DNA from: Heterodontus francisci
Lineage: Eukaryota
NCBI RefSeq assembly: GCF_036365525.1
Contig: NC_090404.1
Location: 6,014,001 to 6,078,000 of the forward strand
Length of the DNA stretch: 64,000 nt
Reading direction: 5' to 3'
Below are positions 1 to 59,100 of this stretch, in pieces. Under the pieces are notes generated by a model. That model searched no databases and was not told where the DNA came from. It saw only the letters and a list, made by a program, of their open reading frames with translations. Position 1 is the stretch's first letter. Each line of letters opens with the position of its first letter. The position numbers were made by a program, and so were the translations under genes.

Positions 1-640
1 ACTCCTTCTTCCTCCCTCCAATTTCATACGGACAGTCCTTCCTCCTCCCTCCACATTTGCACTGACACTCCTTTCCCCTCCCTCCAATTTCATACTGACA
101 CTCCATCACCTTCCCTCCATTTCATTCTGACACTCTTTCTCTCCCTCCAATTTCATATTAACACTCCATCCCCTTCCCTCCAATTTCATATTGATACTCA
201 TTCCTCTTCCCTCCAATTTCATACTGACACTCCTTCCTCTTCCCTCCAATTTCATACTGACACTCCATCCCCTTGCCACCAATTTCATACTGACACTCCA
301 TCCTCTTCCCTCCAATTTCATACTGACACTACTTCCCCTTCCCTCCAATTTCATACTGACACTCCTTCCTCTTCCCTCCAATTTCATACTGACACTCCAT
401 CCCCTTCCCACCAATTTCATACTGACACTCCATCACCTTCCCTCCAATTTCATTCTGACACTCTTTCTCTCCCTCCAATTTCATATTAACACTCCATCCC
501 CTTCCCTCCAATTTCATATTGACACTCCTTCCTCTTCCCTCCAATTTCATACTGACACTACTTCCCCTTCCCTCCAATTTCATACTGACACTCCTTCCCC
601 TTCCCTCCAATTTCATACTGACATTCCCCCTCCCTCCAAT
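1..640. repeat. 33-bp pyrimidine-rich minisatellite (about 19 copies, unit ~CTCCAATTTCATACTGACACTCCTTCCCCTTCC); degenerate copies also at ~815-925
   Basis: Direct tandem periodicity; the ORFs here are 11-aa repeats (MKLEGRGWSVS). Confidence 0.95.
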
Positions 641-1699
641 AAAACTTAAAAACAGAAGAAATAGCAGGAGTAGACCTTTCAGACCTTAGATCCTGCTCCA
701 CCATTCAAAGAGAACATGGCTAACCTTCTATTGCAACACATTTTCCCGCACAATCACACATTCCTTGATGTTTTTACTATGTAGAAATCTATCGATCGCA
801 ATCTTGAACATGCTCAGTTTCATGCTGACACTTCTTCCCTCTCTCTCCAATTTCACACTGATACTCCTTCCCCTCCCTCCAATGTCACACCGACACTCCT
901 TCCCTCTCCCTCCAATATCATTCTGGAATTTTCCTGCTGTCACTACGGTTTCCATCTCCTGCCCCTTCAATGTCTCCACCATTGTTCTGCCTTCTTGATG
1001 TGCTTTAAGTGATTGAATGTCACGGTAAACTGTGTGACAGAATTCCCGCATACAATGCATAACCGTGTTTAATCACTTAATACAGTAACAACAATATGCA
1101 GGGACCAGCAATGGTGGGCGGGGTGGGGTTGGGCACTGAAGAGCAGGAAGAGGCCAGGAGCTGTTCTGAGGGGGCGAGGAGCAGCTGGCAATGGTACTTC
1201 ATGTATGTGGGCCCGTTATCCCATGATCATGGGACAGATCTGAACTTTGGGAAATAGTTTGACCATCCCTGGTCTCAGAGGCAAACATTTCCCTGTATCT
1301 CGGTATCTCCGGAGACCTTTGCTCATTGATATCGTACAAAAGCTAGGAGCAGTTGAGTCCTTTTGTGCACTTGATGGGTATTGATTTTAACTGACTTAAA
1401 AGCCTCTGGATTTCAATGTTACAACAAGAATATGTTTGAGAAGAGTTAGAAAAGAAATCACGAATACTGGAAAACTGAAAAGAACACAGAAATGGGGAAA
1501 TACACCGCAGGTCAATCATCATTTGAAAGAGATAAATCGATGGCTAATGTTTTAGGTGGGACTCCTTCAAGAATGAATACCTCCTGCAACATAGGAGATC
1601 TCAGCTTCATTTTCACTTGCTAAACAGTTGCAAATATTGCACTGTACTCAGTAATCTCAACTCCCCCCAACCCCCCATCCATTCTCCATAGCAATTCCT

Positions 1700-14374: not shown

Positions 14375-14756
14375 NNNNNNNNNNNNNNNNNNNNNNNNNN
14401 NNNNNNNNNNNNNNNNNNNNNNNNNNNNNNNNNNNNNNNNNNNNNNNNNNNNNNNNNNNNNNNNNNNNNNNNNNNNNNNNNNNNNNNNNNNNNNNNNNNN
14501 NNNNNNNNNNNNNNNNNNNNNNNNNNNNNNNNNNNNNNNNNNNNNNNNNNNNNNNNNNNNNNNNNNNNNNNNNNNNNNNNNNNNNNNNNNNNNNNNNNNN
14601 NNNNNNNNNNNNNNNNNNNNNNNNNNNNNNNNNNNNNNNNNNNNNNNNNNNNNNNNNNNNNNNNNNNNNNNNNNNNNNNNNNNNNNNNNNNNNNNNNNNN
14701 NNNNNNNNNNNNNNNNNNNNNNNNNNNNNNNNNNNNNNNNNNNNNNNNNNNNNNNN
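14375..14756. other. Assembly gap (382 N)
   Basis: Run of N. Confidence 1.
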
Positions 14757-19131: not shown

Positions 19132-19229
19132 AGTGATGTGGAAGGTGGGACGTGGATCCAGTAACCGCCTCGATCAGGGATTCGATAGGCGGCGCCTGTA
19201 ACCTCGCCCCCTTCTGCCAGGTATTTAAA
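19132..19229 (+). promoter_or_regulatory. VH promoter: TCR-decamer/CRE-like AGTGATGTGG (19132-19141) and TATA-like TATTTAAA (19222-19229); no canonical octamer seen
   Basis: Motifs ~190 and ~100 bp upstream of the leader ATG; shark IgH promoters are known to lack the octamer. Confidence 0.55.
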
Positions 19230-19320
19230 TGCCAGTCACTGGGACCGCAATACAACAGTCCGGGAGCCGGTTTGCTCAGTGAGTTCTTGTCAGAACCATT
19301 TACCCCGAATTGTCGAAAGG

Positions 19321-19366
19321 ATGAGGTCGGCGATTTTTCTCAGTCTGTTGCTGGTTTTCTTACCCC
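19321..19366 (+). CDS. IGHV: IgM VH leader exon (MRSAIFLSLLLVFLP)
   Basis: ATG, hydrophobic signal peptide, phase-1 donor C|GTGAGT, 130-bp intron ending TTTTACAG. Confidence 0.93.
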
Positions 19367-19496
19367 GTGAGTAGTTTTTTTTAAATTGTCCAACCATTCA
19401 CTGTTACTGTCTCAGTGTTGGTCTCTCTGAGGAATATTACAGAGACAGGAATCATTTCACCAGGATTAATCCTCTGGATTTTTGATATTTTTACAG

Positions 19497-19824
19497 GTGT
19501 CCATTCGGATGTCGTGTTGACTCAGCCAGAGGCAGAGACCGGGATTCCCGGTGGCTTCCTGAGACTGACCTGTAAATCCAGCGGGTTCGATATTGGCAGC
19601 CATGGCATGCACTGGGTCCGACAATTTCCCGGGCAGAGGCTGGAGTGGTTGCTTTACTACTATAGTCCATCCAGCAGCAATTATTCCCCAGGGATTGAAA
19701 GTAGATTTACTGCGTCTAAAGACATTTCAAAGAGCATCTTCGCTTTGGACATGAAGAACCTGAAGACTGAAGACACCGCCATCTATTACTGTACAAACAG
19801 CACAATAGCCCGTCTACTATGTAT
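19497..19824 (+). CDS. IGHV: IgM VH exon pre-joined to D-like sequence (germline VD/VDD)
   Basis: [15 protein letters not shown]...LTC...WVRQ...EDTAIYYC then in-frame [10 protein letters not shown]; no 23-RSS after V; followed directly by a 12-RSS. Confidence 0.92.
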
Positions 19825-19852
19825 CACAGCAGTTAACGGCAATACAAAAATC
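19825..19852 (+). other. 12-bp-spacer RSS (D-type 3' signal)
   Basis: CACAGCA + GTTAACGGCAAT (12 nt) + ACAAAAATC. Confidence 0.88.
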
Positions 19853-20172
19853 TCCTCCGCACCAATAGATTGAGTCTGGGTCAGTGCTGACTTTTACCAT
19901 CCAGCTGTATATGCGGTCAAGAGCTATTTGTGTTCAGCACTGTCCTACCAGCATGGTTCAGTACGGATTAACTGTGATAATTAATCACTGGATTAGTTAG
20001 AGTTTCACTGAGACAATAACAGTTCACGGATTACTCTATGAAATATTTATAAAGAGTTAAAATTATTTATTAACGTAATTATCATTTTATGGAGATCCAT
20101 CGTGACTTTACTTTCCATCTGGATTGGAGCATTTAAACTAATGCTGGATTTCTGTCTGCTCTTTGCAGAACA

Positions 20173-20211
20173 GGTTATTGTGTGGCGCAGGCCGGGGAAT
20201 GCAACACTGTG
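20173..20211 (-). other. 23-bp-spacer RSS of JH
   Basis: GGTTATTGT + 23 nt + CACTGTG immediately 5' of J. Confidence 0.92.
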
Positions 20212-20259
20212 ACTCTATAGCCTACTGGGGACAAGGCACCATGGTGGCGGTGACTGCAG
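20212..20259 (+). CDS. IGHJ: JH segment (SIAYWGQGTMVAVTA)
   Basis: WGQG motif, donor G|GTAAG. Confidence 0.95.
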
Positions 20260-21329
20260 GTAAGAAATATGCACTCATTCAGTAACTGCAGTTTTTATTT
20301 TATATTTCTGTTTATCTAAGTAACTTATTCCTTCACTGAAACATGGTTTCGGTGGATTCTGTATAAGATTGTAATGTTTCATGAATTCTGCTGGAAATGG
20401 ATTCGGGGATTGAATGATTTCTCCTCAGAAGTTGTTGTTGAAGAATTGATTGATGTGAATTGGCGATGAGATTATGTGGCTGGTTTATTTAACATTCCGA
20501 ATTGTTTGGCGTTTCTACAATGTTTAATCTGGGTGACATCCTGTCCTGCAGGCCCGATGATCTAATGCAAGCACTATGTGTTTAAATTTGTTTGAAATTA
20601 GATTGTCTACAGAAAGCTTTAGCAGTCAAAAATAACCTTCCGATATTTTAATGTACTTTTCTTTGTGACAATTAAATTATCAGTTAATCTAATGCTCACG
20701 AACACTCATATAAAATACATGAGCTGTTACTGCAATTGAAAACTACATGAATAACAATTTGGAGCTTTGCTCCGATTAAAAAATAATAAAACTTATAATA
20801 GAGAGTTATCACCTAATAATGCTAAAATATGCTATCGTCTCAAATAGAAATTTATTGGTCATGTTCCGCCTACTCACAATTCTGCTGCTAGCCTTTCATA
20901 TTTATTTTATTGAATAATTAATTACCTCAGTGATGAGCGAGTTCTGTAAATTCTGTGTTGAGATTTTTTTTTTTGAAATGTTACTTTTTTATTTGTTCTT
21001 AGAGTGTGAGCATCGCTGGCAAGGCCAACAATTAAGGCTCATCCTGATTATTATCCCAAAAATATAATCCATTGATAAAAAATGTAAGACTACATGACAA
21101 AGCAGCTCAAATTGGGCATTTCATAAAGTGCACTAAAGATCAGTTTCTTTCAATACAGTCTATGAGGTGCTTCACTACTCTTGCCACCCCAGGTTATATT
21201 TACCATGTACATTTTCATTACATGCCAAAAGCATTCTCTGATGCCTGCAGCCCGAGAGTTTTTGCACAGTTTTCAGTCCCTCGGTATAACTATGGTGAGA
21301 GGATTTTTTTTACACAGTGGCCTTTCTGA

Positions 21330-28558: not shown

Positions 28559-28858
28559 CGACACCGTCTCCCCCAACCCTCTACGGCCTGTTCTCCTCCT
28601 GTGAACAACCCAACACCGACAGCTCCGTGGCCTACGGCTGTTTGGCGATGGACTACACCCCTGAAATCACTACCGTTTCCTGGAAGAAAGATAAAGAGCC
28701 GATCACCACTCGATTGAAGAATTACTCGTCAGTGCTGAACAAGAAGGGAACCTACACCCTGAGCAGCCAATTAACCATCACCGAGTCAGAGGTGGGAAGC
28801 AGCAAAATCTACTGCGAGGTTCGACGCGGAGAGTCAGTCTGGATCAAAGAAATTCCAG
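28559..28858 (+). CDS. IGHM: IgM heavy chain Cmu1 exon (locus 1)
   Basis: CCCCAG|CG acceptor; [17 protein letters not shown]...YGCLAMD...WKK...[17 protein letters not shown]; G|GTTAGT donor. Confidence 0.97.
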
Positions 28859-29072: not shown

Positions 29073-29390
29073 ATCTTCAAAATGACATCGTCCATCCAAC
29101 TATTATCCTCACCCTGAGTTCCAGTGAAGAAATCACAAGCAGCAGATTTGCAACTGTCGTGTGTTCAATCATCGATTTCCATCCAGAGTCAATAACCGTG
29201 AGTTGGTTGAAGGATGGACAACCCATGGATTCGGGCTTCGTCACCTCTCCCGCCTGTGAAGCGAACGGGAACTTCTCGGCGACCAGCCGGCTGACTGTCC
29301 CCGCTGGGGAATGGTTCACCAACACGGTCTATACCTGCCAGGTCTTCCATCAAGAGGTCACCCAAAGCCGAAACATCACCGGATCTCAGG
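29073..29390 (+). CDS. IGHM: Cmu2 exon (locus 1)
   Basis: TTGAAG|AT; [10 protein letters not shown]...[20 protein letters not shown]...YTCQV...ITGSQ; G|GTAAG. Confidence 0.97.
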
Positions 29391-30149
29391 GTAAGAGACA
29401 CAAACCGAGGCAGCTCCGGATCATTCTGTGCCCCATGTTAAAGTCAAGATTTTATTGGAATTAGTAAAAAGCACAGAACTGTTACTAATTTACCATCATG
29501 TAGTTTTTTTTGCTTCATTTAGCTATGAGTGCTGAATTAGGATTGCTGACGGTTCAGCATGTCATCACATCACCAAAGAATGTTTCCCTCTGCTTTGATG
29601 TCATACAGTGAGTGAGGTGGCCTTGATTTCAGGTTTATTCTGAGTCGGCTGATGGTATTCGGAGCGGCAATTGGTGTCTGGAACCCTTTACCGGTAACAG
29701 TCTCGGGATCAAGTGCCAGAAAGAGTATCTATCCGATTGAGAAAACTGTTCAATTCTGGGCTCAGGAGGAATATATTGGACCTGGGAGTGGTACAATGCA
29801 GATTCACTGGATTGATAGCGGGGCTGACTAGGTTAAATTATGAGGGCAGTTCTCACAGACCAAACTGTTGCTCCTTTAATTATAGAAGATTAAAGGGTGA
29901 TCTGATTGAATTGTTTTTAAGCTGTTTACTGGAACTAAGGGAGTAGATGGAGAAAAATATTTCCTCTGGTGGAGACCCCAGAACGAATGAAAGCAAGGCC
30001 GTTCAGGGATGATATCAGGAAGGAGCTGTTCACAGGGCGGGTAGCTGAAATCTGAACTTCTCTCGCCCAAATTCGTGTTGAGACTTGGCATCAATTGAAA
30101 ATGTCAATTTTGAGATTGATAGATTTATGTTAGGCAAGGGTATTCAGGA

Positions 30150-31845
30150 TTTTTCCATTCGTTTCATGGGATGTGGGCATCGCTGACAAGGCCAACATTT
30201 GTTGTCCATCCTTGATTTCTCTTGAAGGGGTGGTGGTGGGCTGCCTTCTTGAACTACAGCAGTCCATCTGGTGTGTTAGGGAGGAAGTTTCATGATTTTG
30301 ACCCAATGACAGGTGATATAGTTCCAAGTCAGGATGGTGTGTGACTTGGAGGAGCACTTTCAGATGCTGGTGTGCCCATACGTTTGCTGCCCTTGTCCTT
30401 CTAGGTGGAAGAAGTCGCATACTTGGAACGTGCTGTTGAAAGAGGCGTGGTGAGTTACTGCAGTGCACCTTGTATATGGTACACGTTGCTGCACCATGCG
30501 TCGGTGGTGGAGCGAGTGAATGTTTAAGGTGCCTAAATAGGGTGTCGATCAAGCGGGCTGCTTTGTCCCGGATGGTGTCGAGCTTCCTTAGTATCGCTGG
30601 AGCCGCATTTATCCAGGCAAGTGGAGAGTATTCCATCACATTCCTGACTTGTGTCTTGTAGATGGTGGATCGGCTTTGGGGAGTCAGGAGGTGAGTTACT
30701 CTCTGCACAATTTCTAGCCTCTGACCTGCTCTTGTAGCCACAGTATTTATGTGGCTATAGCTGTTCAATCTCTAGTCAATGTTAATCCCGAGGATGCTGA
30801 TAGTTTGGGATTACGCAATGGAAATGCCACTGAATGTCAAGGGGAGATGGTTAGATTCCCTATTGCTGGAGATCGCCATTGCCTGGCACTTGTGTGGCAC
30901 GAATGTTGCTTGCCATTTATGATCCCTAGCCTGAATGCTGTTAAGGTCTTATTGCAGGACATGGGCTGCATTAGTATCTGAGGAGGTGCGAATGGTACTG
31001 AACATTGTACAATCATCAGAAAACATCCCCACTTCTGACCTTATGACTGAGGGAAGGGCATTGATGAAGCAGCTGAATATGGTTGGGCCTAGGACGGTAT
31101 CCTGACAAACTCCTGCAGCGATGTCCTGGGGCTGAGATAATTGGCCTCCCACAACCACAACCACAACCATCTTCCTTTGCGTTAGGTATGACTCCAACTG
31201 GTGGAGAGTTTTCCCCCTGTTTCCCATTGATTTCAATTTGGCGAGGGCTTCTTGGTGCCACACTCGGTCAAATGCTGCCTTGGTATCAAGGGCGATCACT
31301 CCCGCATCTCTTCTTGAGTTCAGCTCTTTCGTCCATGTTTGCACGAAGGTTGCAAAGAGGCCAGGTGGCATTTGACACTGACAGAACCCAAACTGAGCAT
31401 CAGCGAGTAGATTTTTGCAGTTTAAATGGCACTTGACATCACTTTGCTGATGATCAAGAGTAGACTGACGGGGAGATAGTTGGCCCCTTTAGCCAGTAGT
31501 GGTGTTACCAAGCCACTCTTGGTGATGGACATTGACGTCCCACACCGAGAGAACATTCGGTGCCCTTGCAACCCTCAGTGCTTCTTCCAAGTGGCGTTCA
31601 ACATGGAGGAGTACAATTCAACATCTAAGGGACCGGGCGGTAGGTAGTAATCAGCAGGAGGTTTATTTGCCCATGTTTGACCTAATGCCACGAGAATTCA
31701 TGGGATCTGGAGTCAATGTTGAGGACTCCCAGGGCAATTCCTTCCCGACTGTATACCGCTGTGCCGCCACCTCTGATGAGTCTGTTCTATGGTGGGACAG
31801 GACATGCCTAGGGATAGTGTTGATGGTGTCTGGGATGACATATGT
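30150..31845 (-). mobile_element. CR1/L2-group LINE RT fragment inserted in an older CR1 within the Cmu2-Cmu3 intron (absent from the paralog)
   Basis: ALDTKAAFDRVWHQ...LGPTIFSCFIN...FSDDCTMF; the paralog intron (54430-54970) has the uninterrupted host CR1. Confidence 0.85.
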
Positions 31846-32615
31846 GTAAACAGAATTAAGAAATTAAGATACATATCAATATCAGTCAATTGAATGGTGG
31901 AAATGGCTCGAAGGGCTGAATGGCCTACTCTTTATCCTTTGGTTCTATTACTGCCCTGTGGTCAGATTTCCTTTTGACTCCATACTGACGCATGAGGAGT
32001 ACTCACTCAAGACAGATTTTAGCAAACTACCTCACACCCTGATTACAAATTATTCTGCACCATAAAAAGACTCCTTCGAACCGCAGTTTTCCGACCTATA
32101 ACCCCTCCTTTTACCGGTTCCTGCGCTTTTTCATCTCCACAAATACCGTACAAGGCACCAGAAAATTAACTTTGTTTCCTGTTGCGCCTAAAATTCGGAA
32201 TTTCATTGGACGCTTGTTTGAGGCAGCGTAATTTGCATGTATATCTCGTGCCCTTGGGTGACAGAGCCACTATATTCACCGGAGATGCGATCCAGCGGGA
32301 GCATTGATAGATGGGCAGAAATGAGCCTAGGATTTCAGGAAGAACGTTATTCTGTACGAAACAGAATTGCTTCCGCAATTATTCGGTATTTACGCCGGGT
32401 ACTTGCTTCAAAGCCCATTACAGGTTTCTTTGGGTGTAAGTACACAATACATGTTATAGGATGTCGCAGAAGTTTTTCAAATCATTGCTCTTCTAATAAA
32501 CAATGATGTTTAAGCAAAAGATTTGTTTTTCCTCTCCTGAAAAAAGTGAAGGTTGAATACTGGTGTGCTGATTCTGAAGATGGAGCTTTTCATGACTTCC
32601 ATTTCTGTTTTACAG

Positions 32616-32924
32616 TTCCTTCCTCATGCAATGATCCAGTAATTAAACTACTGCCACCACCAATGGAACAGGTCTTACTGGAGGCGACGGTGACCTTAAC
32701 CTGTGTCGTGTCTAATGCTCCTTATGGAGTCAACGTGTCCTGGACCAAAGAAATGAAGCCTTTGAAATCAAAGATTGCCGTCCAACCCGGAGAGGATCCC
32801 GACAGTGTGATCAGCACCATAAACATCTCGACACAATCCTGGCTGAGTGGGGTTGAGTTCTACTGTGTGGTGAGCCATCAGGATCTGCCGACTCCTCTCA
32901 GAGATTCCATCCACAAGGAAGAAG
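32616..32924 (+). CDS. IGHM: Cmu3 exon (locus 1)
   Basis: TTTTACAG|TT; [15 protein letters not shown]...LTCVVS...[22 protein letters not shown]; G|GTGAAA. Confidence 0.97.
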
Positions 32925-33415: not shown

Positions 33416-33807
33416 TTAAAGATCTGCGGGAACCGTCCGTATCTGTCCTCCTGCCCCCGGCAGAAGAAGTCTCCGCTCAGAGTTTCCTCTCCCTCACCTG
33501 CTTAGTGAGAGGTTTCTCCCCCCGAGAGATCTTCGTCAAGTGGACCGTCAATGACAAGTCGGTGAATCCTGGCAACTACAAGAACACCGAGGTGATGGCG
33601 GAGAACGACAATAGCTCCTTCTTCATCTACAGCCTGTTATCCATTGCAGCGGAGGAGTGGGCCAGCGGCGCTTCTTACTCCTGTGTGGTGGGACATGAAG
33701 CGATCCCCTTGAAGATCATCAACAGAACAGTTAATAAATCCAGCGGTAAACCGAGTTTTGTGAACATTTCCCTTGCACTGATGGATACTGTTAATTCATG
33801 TCAATGA
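33416..33807 (+). CDS. IGHM: Cmu4 plus secretory tail; internal donor for the membrane form after 33745 (AGCG|GTAAA)
   Basis: VKDLREPSV...[17 protein letters not shown]...[11 protein letters not shown]...[23 protein letters not shown]; NIS sequon and penultimate Cys. Confidence 0.97.
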
Positions 33808-33835: not shown

Positions 33836-33841
33836 AATAAA
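33836..33841 (+). terminator. Poly(A) signal of the secreted form
   Basis: AATAAA ~30 nt after the stop, with a downstream GT/T-rich stretch. Confidence 0.75.
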
Positions 33842-36322: not shown

Positions 36323-36450
36323 GTTCCTCCGGCCACGTCTGGATTGAAGACTATGAAGAAGAAAGATGCAACATCAGGACAGCCACGTCCACATACATCA
36401 TCCTGTTCCTCCTGAGCATATTCTACAGTGTTGCCCTCACTCTGGTGAAG
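36323..36450 (+). CDS. IGHM: TM1 exon copy A (intact, divergent)
   Basis: CTGTAG| acceptor; (G)SSGHVWIEDYEEERCNIRTATSTYIILFLLSIFYSVALTLVK; |GTGAG donor; 128 nt, in phase with the Cmu4 donor. Confidence 0.88.
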
Positions 36451-37055: not shown

Positions 37056-39378
37056 CTGAACATCAACCCAGGCATCATCTCTCCCTGCTCCATTCCCTCT
37101 GAAACCATTTCCCTGAACTCATTGAATATCACCCCAGGAATCCTCTCTCCCTGCTTCATTCCCTATGAAACCATTTCCCTGAACTCATTGAATATCATCC
37201 CAGGGATCCTCTCTCCCTGCTTCATCCCCTATGAAACCATTTCCCTGAACTCACTGATAATCACCCCAGGCATCGTCTCTCCCTGCTCCATTCCCTATGA
37301 AACCATTTCCCTGAACTCACTGAACATCACCCCAGGCATCGTCTCTCCCTGCTCCATTCCCTCTGAAACCATTTCCCTGAAATCACTGAACATCACCCCA
37401 GGCATCCTCTCTCCCTGTTCCATTCCCTCTGAAACCATCTCCCTGAACTCACTGAATATCACCCCAGGGATCCTCTCTCTCTGCTTCATTCCCTATGATA
37501 CCATCTCCCTGAACTCACTGAACATTATCCCAGGGATCCTCTCTCCCTGCTTCATTCCCTATGAAACCATTTCCCTGAACTCACTGAACATCACCCCAAG
37601 CATCGTCTCTCCCTGCTCCATTCCCTATGAAACCATTTCCCTGAACTCACTGAACATCACCCCAAGCATCGTCTCTCCCTGCTCCATTCCCTATGATACC
37701 ATTTCCATGAACTCACTGAACATTACCCCAGGGATCCTCTCTCCCTGCTCCATTCCCTCTGAAACCATTTCCCTGAACTCACTGAACATTACCCCAGGGA
37801 TCCTCTCTCCCTGCTCCATTCCCTATGAAACCATTTCCCAGAACTCACTGAACATTACCCCAGGGATCCTCTCTCCCTGCTCCATTCCCTATGAAACCAT
37901 TTCCCTGAACTCACTGAACATTACCCCAGGGATCCTCTCTCCCTGCTCCATTCCCTCTGAAACCATTTCCCTGAACTCACTGAACATTACCCCAGGGATC
38001 CTCTCTCCCTGCTCCATTCCCTATGAAACCATTTCCCAGAACTCACTGAACATTACCCCAGGGATCCTCTCTCCCTGCTCCATTCCCTCTGAAACCATTT
38101 CCCTGAACTCACTGAACATTACCCCAGGGATCCTCTCTCCCTGCTCCATTCCCTATGAAACCATTTCCCAGAACTCACTGAACATTACCCCAGGCATCGT
38201 CTCTCCCTGCTGCATTCCCTCTGAAACCATCTCCCTGAACTCACTGAACATCACCACAGGCATCGTCTCTCCCTGCTCCATTCCCTATGATACCATCTCC
38301 CAGAACTCACTGAACATTACCCCAGGCATCGTCACTCCCTGCTCCATTCCCTCTGTAACCATTTCCCTGAACTCACTGAACATTGCCCCAGGCATCGTCA
38401 CTCCCTGCTCCATTCCCTCTGTAACCATTTCCCTGAACTCACTGAACATTACCCCAGGCATCGTCACTCCCTGCTCCATTCCCTCTGTAACCATCTCCCT
38501 GAACTCACTGAACATTGCCCCAGGCATCCTCTCTCCCTACTTCATTCCCTATGAAACCATTTCCCTGAACTCACTGAACATTGCCCCAGGGATCCTCTCT
38601 CCCTGCTCCATTCCCTATGAAACCATCTCCCTCAACTCACTGAATATCGCCCCAGGCATCGTCTCTCCCTGCTCCATTCCCTATGAAACCATTTCCCTGA
38701 ACTCACTGAACATTACCCCAGGCATCGTCTCTCCCTGCTTCATTCCCTATGAAACCATTTCCCTGAACTCACTGAACATTACCCCAGGCATCGTCTCTCC
38801 CTGCTTCATTCCCTATGAAACCATTTCCCTGAACTCACAGAACATTACCCCAGGCATCGTCTCTCCCTGCTTCATTCCCTATGAAACCATTTCCCTGAAC
38901 TCACAGAACATTACCCCAGGCATCGTCTCTCCCTGCTTCATTCCCTATGAAACCATTTCCCTGAACTCACAGAACATTACCCCAGGGATCCTCTCTCCCT
39001 GCTCCATTCCCAATGATACCATCTCCCTCAACTCACTGAATATCGCCCCAGGCATCGTCTCTCCCTGCTCCATTCCCTATGAAACCATTTCCCTGAACTC
39101 ACAGAACATTACCCCAGGGATCCTCTCTCCCTGCTCCATTCCCAATGATACCATCTCCCTGAACTCACTGAGCATCACCCCAAGGATCCTCTCTCCCTGC
39201 TTCATTCCCTATGAAACCATTTCCCAGAACTCACTGAACACTACCCCAGGGATCCTCTCTCCCTGCTCCATTCCCTATGAAACAATTTCCCTGAACTCAC
39301 AGAACATTACCCCAGGGATCCTCTCTCACTGCTCCATTCCCTCTGATACCATCTCCCTGAACTCAATAAACATCACAG
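37056..39378. repeat. 66-bp minisatellite, about 35 copies
   Basis: Unit ~CTGAACTCACTGAACATTACCCCAGGGATCCTCTCTCCCTGCTCCATTCCCTATGAAACCATTTCC. Confidence 0.97.
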
Positions 39379-53348: not shown

Positions 53349-53394
53349 GAAATAGGCACAACCTCTCACTTATTGCTTCAATCTCTCCGCTCAC

Positions 53395-53703
53395 CTTCTT
53401 CCTTGTGGATGGAATCTCTGAGAGGAGTCGGCAGATCCTGATGGCTCACCACACAGTAGAACTCAGCCCCACTCAGCCAGGATTGTGTCGAGATGTTTAC
53501 GGTGCTGATCACACTGTCGGGATCCTCTCCTGGTTGGACGGCAATCTCAGATTTCAAAGGCTTCTGTTCTTGCATCCAGGACACATTGATGCCATAAGGA
53601 GCATTAGACACGACGCAGGTTAAGGTCACCGTCGCCTCCAGTAAGACCTGTTCTATTGATGGTGGCAGTAGTTTAATTACTGGATCATTGCAGGAACAAG
53701 GAA
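53395..53703 (-). CDS. IGHM: Cmu3 exon (locus 2; no Cmu4 downstream)
   Basis: [19 protein letters not shown]...SIHKEE; AG/GT intact; 309 nt. Confidence 0.93.
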
Positions 53704-55314
53704 CTGTAAAACAGAAATAAAAGTCAAACAAAGATTCATCTTCAGAATCAGACACCAATATTCAGCCTTCACTGTCTCTAGGAGAATAAATCAACTTCGA
53801 GATATCGACCTCAAGCTGTTGCTCAAATAATATCGTTTATTGGAAGGACAACAACCTGAAAAGGCTTCCGGGAGATTCTATAACATATACTGTGTACTTG
53901 CACCCTAAGAAGCCTTTATAGGCTTTGAAGCAAGTACCCGCCGTAAAAATCGAATAATTGAGGGAGAAATTGTGTGACGCACGAAACAATGTTTTTTCTG
54001 AAATTCCTGGCGGAACAGGCTCGAGGGGCCGAGTGGCCTACGACTGCTCCTGTTATTTCCGCCCGTTTATCGGGCTTTGCGCTGGATCACATTTCCGTTG
54101 ATTATAATGGCTCTGCCTCCCAAGGACACGAGTTATATATCTAATTCACACTGGCTCAAAACGGGTGTCAAATGAAATTCCGAATTTTAGGCCCAATAGG
54201 AAACAAAGTTAATATTCTGGCGCCTTGTCACGATATTTCGGGTGTTGAAAATATGTTGGAACCAATCAGAGGAGAGGTGGAAGGTCGAGAAAATGCAGTT
54301 TCAGTGAGTCTTTTTGAGGCGGAGAATAACTTTCAATAATGGTGTGAGGCAGTTTGCTAATATATGTCGTGAGGGAGAACTCCTCATGTGTCAATCTCGA
54401 GTCAGAAGGCATTCTGCTCAGAGGGCAGTAATAGAAACATAGGAAAACTGAGAAGGCCATTCAGCCCGTCGAGCTTATTCCACCATTCAATCAGACAATG
54501 GCTGATCTGTATCTTTGTACCGTCTACCCATAGGTAACCCTTAACACCATTGCCTAACTTCAATCTATCAATCTCAACATGAAAATAGTCAATTGATGCC
54601 AAACTTCAAGAGCGAGTTGAGGGAGAGAATTCCAGATTTCCGCTACCCACTGTGTGAATAGCTTTCCCGATATCATCCCTGAATGACATTGGTCTAATTT
54701 GAAGGTTATGCCCCCTTGTTCTGGAGTCGCCCACCAGAGGAAATATTTTTCTCCGTCGACTCCATCAATTCCAGTAAACATCTTAAACACCTCAATTAGA
54801 TCACCCTTTAATCTTCTATACTCAAAGGAATACCAGTTGGGTCAATGAAACCTGTCCTCTTATTTAACCCGTTCAGCCCCACTATCATTCTAGTCAATTT
54901 GTGTTGCATCACTCCCAATGCCAATATATTCTTCTTGAGCTCATGAGTCCAGAATTGAACACAGTTTTCTAAATAGGGAGGATGCTCTTTCTGACACTTG
55001 ATGCCGAGGCTATTACCTGGAAAGGTTTCCAGACACCTATTGCTGCTATCAGCCAAATCACGATAATCCTGATATCAAGGCCACCTCACTCATGAAATGA
55101 CATCAAAGCAGAGGGAAACATTCTTTGGTGATGTGATGACATGTTGAACAGTGAGCAATTCTAATTCAGCACTCACAGCGGATTGAGGCATACAACTACA
55201 CGATGGCGAATTGGAAAAATATTCAGTGCTTTGTAATAATTCCAATAAATTGTTACGTTTGATTATCATTGGAGCACAAAATGATCTGGAACTTCCTGGG
55301 ATTGTGTCTCTTAC

Positions 55315-55632
55315 CCTGAGATCCGGTGATGTTTCGGCTTTGGGTGACCTCTTGATGGGAGACCTGGCAGGTATAGACCGTGTTGGTGAACCATTCCCGA
55401 GCGGGGACTGTCAACCGACTGGTCGCTGAGAAGTTCCCGTTCACTTCACAGGCAGGAGAGGTGACGAAGCCCGAATCCATGGGTTGTCCATCCTTCAACC
55501 AACTCACGGTTATTGACTCTGGATGGAAATCGATGATTGAACACACGACAGTTGCAAATCTGCTGCTTGTGGTTTCTTCACTGGAAGTCTGGGTGAGGAT
55601 AACAGTTGGATGGACGATGTCACCTTGACAAT
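55315..55632 (-). CDS. IGHM: Cmu2 exon (locus 2)
   Basis: [15 protein letters not shown]...ITGSQ; AG/GT intact; 318 nt. Confidence 0.93.
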
Positions 55633-55841
55633 CTTCAAGAAAAACATGTTAGACATTTCTGGAAGAAAGTAATAACTAATGCAAACTATTCTAATAATTT
55701 TACAGGTTCCTTGCTGTCAAGCAGACACTAACTGGAGTTTCCAGGGATCAGAACTGTGCACTATACTCTAAATGTGATATAGCCAAACCTCTACACAAGA
55801 TCACGATAGCTTTTCTGTTTTTCAGTTTCCACAACACTAAC

Positions 55842-56138
55842 CTGGAATTTCCTTGATCCAGAGCGACTCTCCGCGTCGAACCTCGCAGTAGATTTTGCTT
55901 CTTCCCACCTCTGACTCGGTGATGGTTAACTGGCTGCTCAGGGTGTAGGTTCCCTTCTTGTTCAGCACTGACGGATAAGTCTTCAGCCCAGTGGTGATCG
56001 TCTCTTTATCTTTCTTCCAGGAAACGCTGCTGATTTCGGGGATGCAGTCCATCGCCAAACAGCCGTAGGCCATGGAGCCGTCGGTGTTGGGTTGTTCACA
56101 GGAGCACAGGCCGTAAAGTGTTGGGGGAGACGGTGTCG
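55842..56138 (-). CDS. IGHM: Cmu1 exon (locus 2)
   Basis: [16 protein letters not shown]...WIKEIP; AG/GT intact; 297 nt. Confidence 0.93.
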
Positions 56139-59100
56139 CTGGGCAAGAACGACAGATTGAACAAGTTAGACTCTGTGATTCATGATTATTAACCAGACAA
56201 CTCGGAATTTCACTCCAGCTAGAAACTGATTCCAATATCTTCCGCTTAAAACCTTCATCCGCATTTGAGCTTCTATCAGTTCCATCATTTGCTGATCATC
56301 ACATGCCGGTCCCCTGGTCAGGAACACACCTCTCTTTCAGGACCTGTTACATTACAAAAGTAAGAGCCTTTTGACGCCATCTCAGTGAAGTATCTTTTAT
56401 TAGATTAAACTGGAAGTGGAGTTTCCCCGCTAATCCGACCAGTATTTATTTCTGAACCAACAGCACTTCGCCAAAAATAAAACACTCAGCATTTATTAAT
56501 TGCAATTATTGGAAATTTTCTCTCTGCAAATAGCTTGCTGGGTTCCCCCACCCCACCACTCCGTCCCCACCCCCAGCGCCCATCACCCCGCTCCCATCCA
56601 CTTCCCCACCTCCAACCCCCACCCCCCGGAAAATAGCGACTGCTATTTAAAAGTGCCATCTGTTATTCTAATAGGTGCTTATAAAAATGTGCTTAAAACT
56701 CGAAACTTGATTACCAGGCAAAGTAATTCCACTATTTTCTCATAAAAACCTAGAACAAATCCTAGCATGTTCATGACCCAGGCTTATCAAACAATAAAAA
56801 TAATAGCAGAGAAGGAGGCCATTCGGTCCATCAAACCTGTGAAAGATGACTCCAGCGATCCCGCTGACCTTCCAATTCCTAATCTTCTTTTCAAAAGTTC
56901 CATTTTATCCAGCTATTTTAGATTCTATTTACAGCCCTCTTTCTGATAGGACATTCCAGATCCTAACAACCCCCTGTGTAGAAGAGTAGATTCATACCCT
57001 CTTCCTTCATTCTTTTGACGCTGATTTTAAATCAGTGCCCTCCACAGACCAACTCACTGATCTGGGGAAATTGGTTTCTGAATTTCTGTATAAAATATTC
57101 ATTATTCAAAACACCTCTACCAGACTTCATTTTAATCTTCTATGTTCCCATAACAATAAATATCTTTTACAATAAATAGTTGAAGTCTCCTTTAAAATAT
57201 GGACTGAATCATTTAGTACACAGATTTCAGAGGGGAATTTTCCACAACCTAGTTTCTGGAATTAAAACTTTGGACGACTCGGCATTGACTCCAGACTACC
57301 ACTTTCCTTCTCAGTACTTGTGGATTGCGATTTGTGTTCTATCTTTACTGAATGGATCTCTCCCGAGTTTAATTCTCCCTCCAACTCAATTAATAATCCG
57401 AATTAAATCCGATTCCAAAAAATCGGTCATCTGGAATGATGTTCTTGAAAAGGTCCATTTAATTTTTCAAAGTATCTTCCCACCCCTCACCAGTGAGAAC
57501 TGGTGTTGCTGACTGTGCTGTTACAGCCACCTCTTCTTGCTGCTTGCACCGATCATAATGTGATCAGGACAGGCTCCTTCTATAAATATCTGATATTGAC
57601 ATCACTTACACATTATACATCGAGTGAATACATCGAGGTTCCAGGCAAGGAAGGACAAAAGTTCCTGAAGTGTTATTGCTGACATGGTCAACTCTCACTT
57701 CTGGTTTGTGTGGACAATTCAAACACCTGCAATTTATTGATCAGGTATTGAAAGCTCGCTCACCAATATAGTGTAAAAGATTGTCGATGTTGATGGCGCA
57801 GAAGTAGGAGATATGGGCTTTCAAATGGCAAGAGATAATATACCACATAAGAGAACATTTGGAAAATAGAAGCGAATAGATTAAAGGGATGGTGGTTACC
57901 TGCTAAGATATAGGAAGCAAAGAGAGACGGTGAACCAATGCTTTTCTGACTAAAAAGAATTAACTATTGTGATCCCCTTGCTTGGTCAGAGGGTCATTGT
58001 TTTTTTTTGTTAAGTACAATGAGGTGGACTTGAGCACCTGACTACTATATTTAGTAGTCTTTGTACATGGACATCTCTTTGGACTGCCATTGTTCTTAGC
58101 TTTCTCGTGATACATGGATCTATCCTTTATTGGCCCAAATAGGACGATGCCAGACTCACCTGTGTTGAAATCCATCTGCCACAGTTTTGTCCAATCACTT
58201 AATCTGTCAATGTCTCTGTAATTTTATGTGTCCGTCTATACTACTCATTGCACCACCAATCTTTGTGTCATTGATAAACCTGAATTGATGTCGAAGTTCG
58301 AGGATGATACAAAACAAATAGTGAGCAGGATAGTAACAGGGTTCAGGAGGACATAGACAGAGTGGTGAAATGTTCAGTGACACAGTAGATGCAATTTAAT
58401 GCGGATAAGTGTGAAGTGTAATCTGAAGGTAATGTAATCGAAATGGCACTATTTTGAAGGGGGTAAAAAAGTAGAGGGGCCTGAGGTGCATATTCACAAT
58501 GTTATGAAGGCGGTTAAGAAAGCAACTTGGTCTTGTAAAATGGATTATTGAATAAAAAAACAAGGAAGTCAGGTTAAAGCTTTACAAATCACTGATTAGG
58601 CTGGAGTATCTTTTGCACAATTCTGCACATCACACTTCCGGAAGGATGTCACGGCTTTGGGGAGAGTGCAGAGGGAGTTTACCAGGATTATGTCAGAAAT
58701 GAGGGAGTTCAGTTATATAGAGTGATTATACAAGTCGAATTGATCTCATTAGGCGGTCACCGAATAGATATATTCAAAATTTTGGGATGTCTTGATGTAG
58801 CAGATAAGGAGAAATTGTTTCCTCTGGCAAGTGGGTCAGTGGCAAAATAAATAACTGGCAACAAAATGGAGTGTGGGCGGGGTGGTGTCTGCAGAAGGAG
58901 GTTTGTTTACTGATAGACGGTGGTTTTCATAGAACCATAAATTGGCTACAGCACAAAAGGAGACCATACGACCCATCGTATCCATGCAGGCTCACTGCAA
59001 AGTGAGCCCGCATCTGGAATGCACAAGGCAACCGGACACGTCCTCGAAGGAGACTAATTTGCATGGTTATGAGGAAAAAACTGGCTTGTAGGATTAAATT

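What the first reader, a model, noticed from the sequence alone, without database searches (positions are those of the whole stretch)
19497..20259. Partially germline-joined VD(D)-J IgM gene, one RAG join from completion, with an otherwise intact locus
Seen: VH has no 23-RSS. After YYC the frame continues for 32 nt ([10 protein letters not shown]) and ends on CACAGCA-12-ACAAAAATC; 320 bp later is JH with a 23-RSS, and no free D with flanking RSSs lies between. Known: unrearranged shark IgH is V-23, 12-D1-22/23, 12-D2-12, 23-J, and germline-joined VDD-J genes exist in Heterodontus, attributed to RAG activity in germ cells. Inference: V-D1-D2 were fused in the germline in frame. Leader, V, J, Cmu1-4, tail and one TM1 are all open, so this may be an expressible semi-invariant antibody gene with a mostly hard-wired CDR3 and a single variable junction. 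An untrimmed join is one base out of frame, so trimming or N addition is needed.
Basis: partly seen in the sequence, partly recalled or inferred. Interest (0 to 1): 0.85.

Follow-up and report, generated by a model that had tools for sequence, protein, structure and literature searches.

The report
Half-joined shark IgM antibody gene
This is a shark-type IgM heavy-chain gene whose V segment is already fused in the chromosome to a short D-like stretch, leaving one cut-and-paste step to J. That layout has been known in sharks since 1988 and recurs in this genome, so it is real but ordinary.

Summary
After the YYC codon (TGT 19790-19792) the V frame runs on for 32 nt. It ends on a 12-spacer recombination signal (CACAGCA / 12 / ACAAAAATC, 19825-19852). 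A J segment with a perfect-heptamer 23-spacer signal lies 320 nt further on, and no free D lies between. Leader, V, J, Cmu1-4, secretory tail and one TM1 exon are open, with good splice sites.

A 1,390-nt short-read DNA contig from the assembly's own sample matches the fused layout exactly, as does a spliced unrearranged transcript. An assembly artefact is therefore unlikely. No non-lymphoid or second-animal DNA was available.

One RNA contig joins position 19816 to 20215, as a D-to-J join would, so both signals appear usable. That product is out of frame and hits a stop. No productive transcript was seen in the rows shown.

D origin of the 32 nt cannot be demonstrated. There is only a 7-nt D1-like core and no D2 similarity. 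A heptamer-like CACAATA sits where related V genes carry their own heptamer.

Partly germline-joined VD-J clusters are textbook for cartilaginous fish, and this scan noted at least six more on this chromosome. Verdict: new member of a known kind, low to moderate interest.

The parts
19321..19366 (+). Leader exon (MRSAIFLSLLLVFLP, phase 1), GT donor at 19367
   Evidence: RNA contigs splice 19366 to 19497 with GT..AG ends (table 5).
19497..19792 (+). VH exon up to the conserved YYC cysteine codon
   Evidence: Pfam V-set, E 4.9e-15. 52-63% identical to other shark VH. Two X5 RNA contigs match 19562-19751 with no differences (table 8).
19793..19824 (+). 32-nt in-frame extension ([10 protein letters not shown] plus 2 nt): the presumed V-end / junction / D remnant. 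Contains heptamer-like CACAATA at 19801-19807.
   Evidence: D homology test. Paralog V flanks seen as loose ends.
19825..19852 (+). 12-RSS: CACAGCA / GTTAACGGCAAT / ACAAAAATC (D2-type 3' signal)
   Evidence: Heptamer 5/7 with CAC kept, nonamer 8/9.
19880..20168 (+). Cryptic GT..AG intron (289 nt) removed from the unrearranged transcript. Both RSS are retained in that RNA.
   Evidence: X5 contig of 187 nt lies on 19769-19878 and then 20168-20244 with no differences (table 8).
20173..20211 (+). JH 23-RSS: GGTTATTGT / 23 nt / CACTGTG
   Evidence: Heptamer 7/7, nonamer 8/9.
20212..20259 (+). JH coding segment (SIAYWGQGTMVAVTA), GT donor at 20260
   Evidence: The RNA loose end behind 20259 equals the first 19 nt of Cmu1 at 28559.
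28559..28858 (+). Cmu1 exon
   Evidence: Pfam C1-set, E 5.6e-12. AG/GT borders, length divisible by 3.
29073..29390 (+). Cmu2 exon
   Evidence: Pfam C1-set, E 2.1e-19. Borders.
32616..32924 (+). Cmu3 exon
   Evidence: Pfam C1-set, E 2.6e-9. Borders.
33416..33807 (+). Cmu4 exon with secretory tail and TGA stop. Internal TM splice donor after 33745. AATAAA at 33836.
   Evidence: Pfam C1-set, E 4.2e-22..
36323..36450 (+). TM1 exon, open in phase 1 (SSGHVWIEDYEEERCNIRTATSTYIILFLLSIFYSVALTLVK)
   Evidence: TM2 was not examined.

Best explanation
This is a cartilaginous-fish IgM minilocus (leader-V ... J ... Cmu1-4, tail, TM) carried in the chromosome in a partly joined state.

Layout (shown): V is fused in frame to 24-32 nt of junction or D-derived sequence. 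That sequence still carries a D2-type 3' 12-RSS. J with its 23-RSS lies 320 nt away, unjoined.

Origin (inferred): RAG-type V-to-D (and probably D-to-D) joining in a germ-line cell of an ancestor, as accepted for such clusters, followed by drift of the junction.

Behaviour today:
- The V promoter drives transcripts of the unjoined allele. These read into a stop at 19871 and have a cryptic 289-nt intron spliced out (shown).
- In lymphocytes one 12/23 deletion joins 19824 minus trimming to 20212 plus trimming (one example shown, non-productive).
- About a third of such joins would be in frame. They would give a heavy chain with a largely fixed CDR3 (TNSTIARLL[C]...YWGQG) and one variable junction (inferred, not observed).
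For: - Anatomy. Only one V and one J in the window.
- All exons are open, phase 1, with Pfam V-set or C1-set hits.
- DNA: a 1,390-nt Logan contig of run X1 matches 19763-20400 exactly. Its depth of 4 equals the only depth seen across the single-copy V-J spacer (tables 2 and 8).
- RNA of the same animal: an exact contig carries V end, extension, 12-RSS, a splice, then 23-RSS and J.
- RNA joint 19816 to 20215 with 4 nt of microhomology. Trimming is 4-8 nt on the V side and 3-7 nt on the J side, as expected for a coding joint at exactly these two RSS (table 5).
- The kind is established: PMC5192425, PMC4279169, and PMC2193156 citing Kokubu et al. 1988. Somatic VDD-J joints keep the D2 3' end and RSS intact (PMC2435157, Fig. 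S1).
- The scan's own unchecked notes list at least six further VDD-J clusters on this chromosome.
- A bamboo-shark predicted protein (P0001) reads YYC-TRAVGSWIV and then TA....TK. This is compatible with the same V-D(D)-12-RSS read-through (back-translation only, a lead).
Against: - The 32 nt are G-poor and lack the GGG cores of shark D1 and D2. The only match is ACAGCAC to a D1-like core taken from one CDR3 of the same animal (P 0.01-0.02, picked after the fact). D2 similarity is at chance level.
- CACAATA at 19801-19807 sits within 1 nt of the offset at which a paralogous V gene has its heptamer CACAATG (loose ends). A coding joint should not retain a heptamer.
- The DNA and RNA come from the same sample as the assembly, and the tissue is unknown.
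- The only cluster-specific rearranged transcript shown is out of frame.
- This V carries residues that differ from nearly all paralog transcripts (19545, 19546, 19552, table 3). That could mean relaxed constraint.
Confidence: 0.75

Rival explanations
1. Non-canonical origin. The V heptamer (CACAATA) is still present, and an ordinary roughly 0.7-0.8 kb germline deletion (or an aberrant repair event) removed the rest of the V signal, D1 and most of D2. This fused V plus heptamer to the tail of D2 with its 12-RSS. Functionally it would still behave as V(12)-(23)J, but it would not be a RAG coding joint.
For: - A paralog V flank in the same animal reads TGT GCCAGAGAT CACAATG AGAAGAACC.
- A related species has TGT ACAAGACAGT CACAGTG (table 7).
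- Here the sequence is TGT ACAAACAG CACAATA, so the heptamer-like word sits at the same offset within 1 nt, and the V end matches the other species' V end but for one base.
- No D2 homology is detectable.
Against: - Free local alignment of the extension to those flanks is not significant (P 0.25-0.76). The positional coincidence was noticed after the fact, in an A/C-rich stretch that also gives chance matches to J and to a nonamer.
- Nothing after CACAATA resembles the paralogs' 23-spacer.
- RAG-type joining is the accepted and, in this genome, apparently common route (PMC2193156).
Confidence: 0.15
2. The fusion is not germline. It would be a somatic VDD-J intermediate (abundant in shark thymocytes and present in B cells) or an assembly error captured from lymphoid DNA.
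For: - Somatic VDD-J configurations and their transcripts are well documented in nurse shark (PMC2435157).
- All supporting reads come from the assembly's own sample.
Against: - Each somatic junction is a rare clone and would not form the consensus.
- The short-read contig runs through junction, spacer and J at the same depth as the single-copy flank.
- An exact unrearranged transcript carries the same junction.
- Somatic joints are usually G/C-rich in N nucleotides and keep recognisable D2, unlike this one.
Confidence: 0.04
3. The origin is as in the best explanation, but the cluster is a functionally inert relic. It is transcribed and occasionally recombined but contributes no useful heavy chains. 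Reasons could be an unpaired Cys and an N-glycan site in the fixed CDR3, and unusual FR1 residues.
For: - Only a sterile and an out-of-frame transcript were seen.
- In horned shark, expression of germline-joined H genes was not detected (PMC2193156, section 23).
- FR1 differs from nearly all paralog transcripts at 19545, 19546 and 19552.
Against: - Every exon and splice site is intact.
- 55 of the 169 simple trimming combinations tried give open frames.
- 15 joints and 130 junction inserts were not displayed, so a productive one may have been missed.
- Joined genes can be favoured in neonates (PMC4279169).
Confidence: 0.35

Closest known systems
Partly germline-joined (VD-J) IgM heavy-chain clusters of the horned shark Heterodontus francisci (Kokubu et al. 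1988, as cited in PMC2193156; reviews PMC5192425, PMC4279169)
   Same: - One V fused in the germline to D-region sequence.
- J still separate with its RSS.
- Its own Cmu exons in the same minilocus.
- Coexists with unjoined and fully joined clusters in the same genome.
   Different: The species here is not identified. The junction shows almost no recognisable D sequence and carries a heptamer-like word. The primary 1988 paper could not be read, so no base-level comparison was made.
Somatic VDD-J (2R) intermediates of nurse shark IgH in thymocytes and B cells (PMC2435157)
   Same: - Same topology: V-D1-D2 fused, D2 3' end and 12-RSS intact, D2-J spacer and J in germline form.
- Such alleles are transcribed.
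   Different: Those are somatic, clonal, rich in N nucleotides, and keep clear D2 cores such as ...TGGGATAG. This one sits in the assembled chromosome and has no D2 core.
Nurse shark IgM1gj, a fully germline-joined VDJ IgM expressed in neonates (PMC4279169, PMC5192425)
   Same: Germline-fixed CDR3 in an IgM-class gene, with a proposed innate-like role.
   Different: IgM1gj is fully joined, lacks Cmu2 and is known to be expressed. Here J is unjoined, all four Cmu exons are present, and productive expression has not been shown.
Chiloscyllium punctatum predicted protein chiPu_0018910 (P0001)
   Same: A VH followed by about 9 extra codons (TRAVGSWIV) and then a TA-4 aa-TK read-through. This is the pattern given here by CACAGCA-12-ACAAAA (ITAVNGNTK).
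   Different: Its extension contains the D1-type AVG motif, which is absent here.

Membership tests
Partly germline-joined VD(D)-J IgH cluster of cartilaginous fish | The V exon has no functional 23-RSS at its 3' end | tested here: met
   No nonamer lies 22-24 nt after any heptamer-like word at the V end. The heptamer-like CACAATA at 19801-19807 has no partner nonamer.
Partly germline-joined VD(D)-J IgH cluster of cartilaginous fish | Extra in-frame nucleotides beyond the V end that derive from D1 and/or D2 | tested here: inconclusive
   32 nt are in frame. There is a 7-nt D1-like match (P 0.01-0.02). D2 comparisons are at chance level, both against nurse shark germline D2 and against a D2-like core from the same animal's CDR3s.
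Partly germline-joined VD(D)-J IgH cluster of cartilaginous fish | The fused coding end carries a heptamer-first 12-RSS (the D2 3' signal) | tested here: met
   CACAGCA / 12 / ACAAAAATC at 19825-19852. An RNA joint lies within 4-8 nt of its border.
Partly germline-joined VD(D)-J IgH cluster of cartilaginous fish | Unjoined J with a 23-RSS a few hundred bp downstream, and no free D between | tested here: met
   320 nt separate the two nonamers.
Partly germline-joined VD(D)-J IgH cluster of cartilaginous fish | The configuration is present in germline (non-lymphoid) DNA | tested here: inconclusive
   An exact short-read contig at flank depth and an exact unrearranged transcript exist. They come from the assembly's own sample, the tissue is unknown, and there is no second animal.
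Partly germline-joined VD(D)-J IgH cluster of cartilaginous fish | Own constant-region exons in the same minilocus | tested here: met
   Cmu1-4, tail and TM1 lie on the same strand 8.3-16 kb downstream. The RNA loose end behind J equals the start of Cmu1.
Functional (productively expressed) IgM heavy-chain gene | In-frame V(D)J-Cmu transcripts from this cluster | tested here: not met
   Among the rows shown, only a sterile spliced transcript and one out-of-frame join (TIARLL-stop) are specific to this cluster. Many rows were not displayed, so absence is not shown.
Functional (productively expressed) IgM heavy-chain gene | Intact leader, splice sites, conserved Cys/Trp, WGxG in J, open C exons | tested here: met

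The most novel reading that the evidence does not exclude
The junction keeps the V gene's own heptamer. The fusion would then have been made not by a standard RAG coding joint but by another germline deletion that handed V the 12-RSS of D2. This would be an independent, non-RAG route by which a four-segment heavy-chain cluster turns into a light-chain-like two-segment V(12)-(23)J gene that still recombines.
Probability: 0.15. Interest if true: 0.5.

Novelty: new member of a known kind. Interest (0 to 1): 0.3.

Why it matters
Partly pre-joined antibody genes are the classic evidence that the V(D)J recombinase has acted in shark germ cells. They are also candidates for innate-like, semi-invariant antibodies.

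This locus adds one well-documented example. It comes with direct RNA evidence that such a gene is transcribed unjoined, with a cryptic splice between the two signals. It also shows that the remaining join is made in lymphocytes.

It does not change the picture. Its modest value lies in being a testable case for two open questions: whether VD-J clusters ever give productive chains, and how their junctions arose.

Tried and rejected
- J-derived origin of the 32 nt (shared ATAGCC and TACT; ACAGCAGTTAA resembling the J end and donor). Local alignment to J is at chance level (P 0.32-0.58). Rejected.
- Homology to nurse shark germline D1 and D2 (PMC2435157, Fig. S1). None found.
- V 23-RSS with an insertion. 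CACAATA lies 36 nt from the nonamer and shows no spacer similarity to paralogs. Rejected as unparsimonious.
- Hybrid joint or inversion. This would leave further RSS in the 320-nt spacer, and none is present. Rejected.
- Nonamer-like ACAATAGCC at 19802-19810 (8/9 to the reverse complement of this J's nonamer). It has no partner heptamer at 12 or 23 nt, so it is treated as chance.
- The search of earlier findings by sequence gave nothing. The operators state that this means nothing.
- Kokubu et al. 1988 (PMC454840) is not held.
- A canonical octamer within 500 bp upstream of the ATG was not found. Only a TATTTAAAT box at 19222-19230, apparently shared with paralogs.
- Species identity was not resolved. 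The best V hits are 61-73% identical (Pristiophorus, Mustelus, Chiloscyllium, Rhincodon).
- The protein search also returned human antibody Fab chains (P0015 and others). These were not fetched, saved, aligned or searched further.
- Exons were scanned one by one by reference.

Full report
**What is there**

The + strand of the window carries one complete cartilaginous-fish IgM minilocus.

- The leader exon is 19321-19366, with ATG at 19321 and a GT donor at 19367.
- The V exon starts at 19497 after an AG. It encodes a normal VH domain (Pfam V-set, E 4.9e-15). It is 52-63% identical to VH of Chiloscyllium, Pristiophorus, Rhincodon, Mustelus and Scyliorhinus.
- After the YYC cysteine codon (19790-19792) the frame continues for 32 nt (19793-19824, [10 protein letters not shown] plus two bases).
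- It then abuts CACAGCA, a 12-nt spacer, and ACAAAAATC (19825-19852). The frame reaches a TGA at 19871.
- 320 nt after that nonamer lies GGTTATTGT, a 23-nt spacer, CACTGTG (20173-20211), and then JH (20212-20259, SIAYWGQGTMVAVTA) with a GT donor.

In a window-wide scan these two signals are the top-scoring RSS matches (13/16 and 15/16) and the only ones next to Ig coding sequence. Overall there were 23 weak hits against about 10.7 in shuffles. A relaxed scan of the V-J interval finds no other signal pair, so no free D exists. The window has one V and one J.

Downstream exons are all open, all phase 1, and have canonical AG/GT borders and C1-set hits where expected:

- Cmu1: 28559-28858
- Cmu2: 29073-29390
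- Cmu3: 32616-32924
- Cmu4 with secretory tail: 33416-33807, with the internal TM donor after 33745
- AATAAA at 33836
- One TM1 exon: 36323-36450

**Is the layout real, and is it germline?**

It also used one RNA run of a related species (X7).

- A 1,390-nt X1 contig matches 19763-20400 with no difference. Its depth of 4 equals the only depth seen across the single-copy V-J spacer. The V exon itself piles up paralogs.
- A 187-nt X5 contig matches 19769-19878 and continues at 20168-20244 with no difference. It therefore carries the V end, the 32 nt, the whole 12-RSS, a 289-nt gap, then the 23-RSS and J. The gap has GT..AG ends (CTGG|GTCAGT ... TTTGCAG|AACAGG). This is a spliced transcript of the unjoined allele, not a recombination product.

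Two data types thus agree with the assembly, so an assembly artefact is unlikely. A clonal somatic event would not give consensus-level DNA. Strictly, though, no non-lymphoid tissue and no second individual were available, and the sample's tissue is unknown. Germline status is well supported rather than proven.

**Does the last join happen?**

X5 and X6 are clearly lymphoid RNA. Leader introns are spliced out (19366 to 19497). Hundreds of contigs join V ends to J with diverse inserts. The loose end behind 20259 equals the first 19 nt of Cmu1 at 28559.

Almost all of these joints come from paralogous clusters, whose V ends read TGT GCAAGAGA... or TGT ACAAGAGA.... One X5 contig (depth 277) is different. 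It joins 19816 to 20215 with 4 nt of shared CTAT. That retains 24-28 of the 32 cluster-specific nucleotides. The implied trimming is 4-8 nt from the 12-RSS border and 3-7 nt from the J border, which is what a coding joint at these two signals should look like.

The translation is ...[12 protein letters not shown]-stop, out of frame. So the signals appear usable, but the only cluster-specific rearranged message on display is non-productive. Fifteen further joints and 130 inserts were not shown, so a productive one cannot be excluded. Simple trimming alone gives 55 open in-frame products out of the 169 combinations tried.

**What are the 32 nucleotides?**

In the canonical cluster (V-23, 12-D1-22/23, 12-D2-12, 23-J) the only coding-side 12-RSS is the 3' signal of D2. 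The signal and the D2-J-like spacing therefore argue for a V...D2 fusion. Somatic nurse shark VDD-J joints do leave the D2 3' end and its signal intact (PMC2435157, Fig. S1).

The coding sequence itself does not confirm this.

- It is G-poor and lacks the GGG cores of shark D segments.
- Against nurse shark germline D1 and D2, and against D-like cores read from this animal's own CDR3 inserts, there is only one match. ACAGCAC (19797-19803) matches a D1-like core with P 0.01-0.02, chosen after the fact. D2 comparisons are at chance level.
- Whether one or two D segments went in cannot be told. An unchecked scan note reports a cluster with a single 12/12 D in this genome (s1-874426).

A second oddity was first flagged in a sister note (s1-874026). 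CACAATA at 19801-19807 lies 8 nt after TGT. Loose ends show a paralog in the same animal reading TGT GCCAGAGAT CACAATG AGAAGAACC.... The related species reads TGT ACAAGACAGT CACAGTG.... Here the sequence is TGT ACAAACAG CACAATA. The word therefore sits where the V heptamer belongs, and the 8 nt before it match the other species' V end but for one base.

A coding joint should not retain a heptamer, so this raises a rival: an ordinary deletion from just after the V heptamer into D2. I rate that rival at about 0.15, for these reasons.

- Free alignment to those flanks is not significant.
- The A/C-rich stretch gives several other chance resemblances, to J and to a nonamer.
- Nothing after CACAATA resembles the paralogs' spacer.
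- RAG-type joining is the accepted route (PMC2193156) and is evidently frequent in this genome.

A hybrid joint, an inversion and an expanded V signal were also considered and rejected (see Tried and rejected).

**Comparison with what is known**

Clusters that are partly (VD-J, VD-DJ) or fully (VDJ) joined in the germline are a textbook peculiarity of cartilaginous fish. They were first found in the horned shark and are attributed to RAG activity in germ cells (PMC5192425 section 17; PMC4279169 section 4; PMC2193156 introduction and discussion, citing Kokubu et al. 1988).

For horned shark heavy chains, expression of the joined genes was not detected (PMC2193156, section 23). Transcripts of somatic VDD-J alleles are known in nurse shark spleen (PMC2435157, section 15).

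The scan's own unchecked notes list at least six other VDD-J or VD(D)-J IgM clusters, plus fully joined ones, on this same chromosome. So the scan has found this kind before on other DNA of this genome.

A bamboo-shark predicted protein (P0001) shows the same read-through pattern at the protein level.

**Verdict**

Layout, intactness and recombination competence are supported. D1-D2 origin is undemonstrated. Productive, semi-invariant antibody expression is unsupported so far.
- This is a new member of a known kind.
- The small additions are the spliced sterile transcript, the observed though non-productive completion of the join, and the heptamer-like word in the junction.
- Interest is about 0.3.

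**Housekeeping**

- Human antibody sequences returned were not used in any way.
- Exons were searched one by one by reference.
- The N run at 14375-14756 was left alone.

Noticed in passing
window 19880-20168: A cryptic GT..AG intron between the 12-RSS and the 23-RSS is spliced out of the unrearranged transcript (X5 contig, exact match). Both signals stay in the RNA. The acceptor lies 4 nt before the J nonamer.
   Followed up: partly
window 53381-56295 (minus strand): A second, inverted IgM constant region with open Cmu1, Cmu2 and Cmu3-like exons. No V or J motif is found anywhere else in the window. No Cmu4 open frame of 75 aa or more was seen on that strand. A sister note (s1-873944) reports the same.
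   Followed up: no
window 37056-39373: A 66-bp tandem repeat of 35 copies, 92% matches, just downstream of the TM1 exon. It gives a 781-codon open frame that is an artefact of the repeat.
   Followed up: no
window 19545, 19546, 19552: This V differs from nearly all paralog transcripts in FR1. The letters T, T, T here are read as A, A, A in over 97% of the depth laid, giving GIPGGF where the two closest Chiloscyllium V genes have GRPAGS. This is either a cluster-specific marker or a sign of relaxed constraint.
   Followed up: partly
window 29400-32600: The Cmu2-Cmu3 intron is swollen to 3.2 kb by reverse-transcriptase / LINE-like open frames on the minus strand (30133-31488).
   Followed up: no
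window 1-1000: A degenerate short tandem repeat gives long open frames on both strands (SSLQFHTDTP-type).
   Followed up: no
window 19802-19810: ACAATAGCC inside the 32-nt extension matches 8/9 to the reverse complement of this cluster's own J nonamer (GGTTATTGT). It has no partner heptamer, so it is probably chance.
   Followed up: partly
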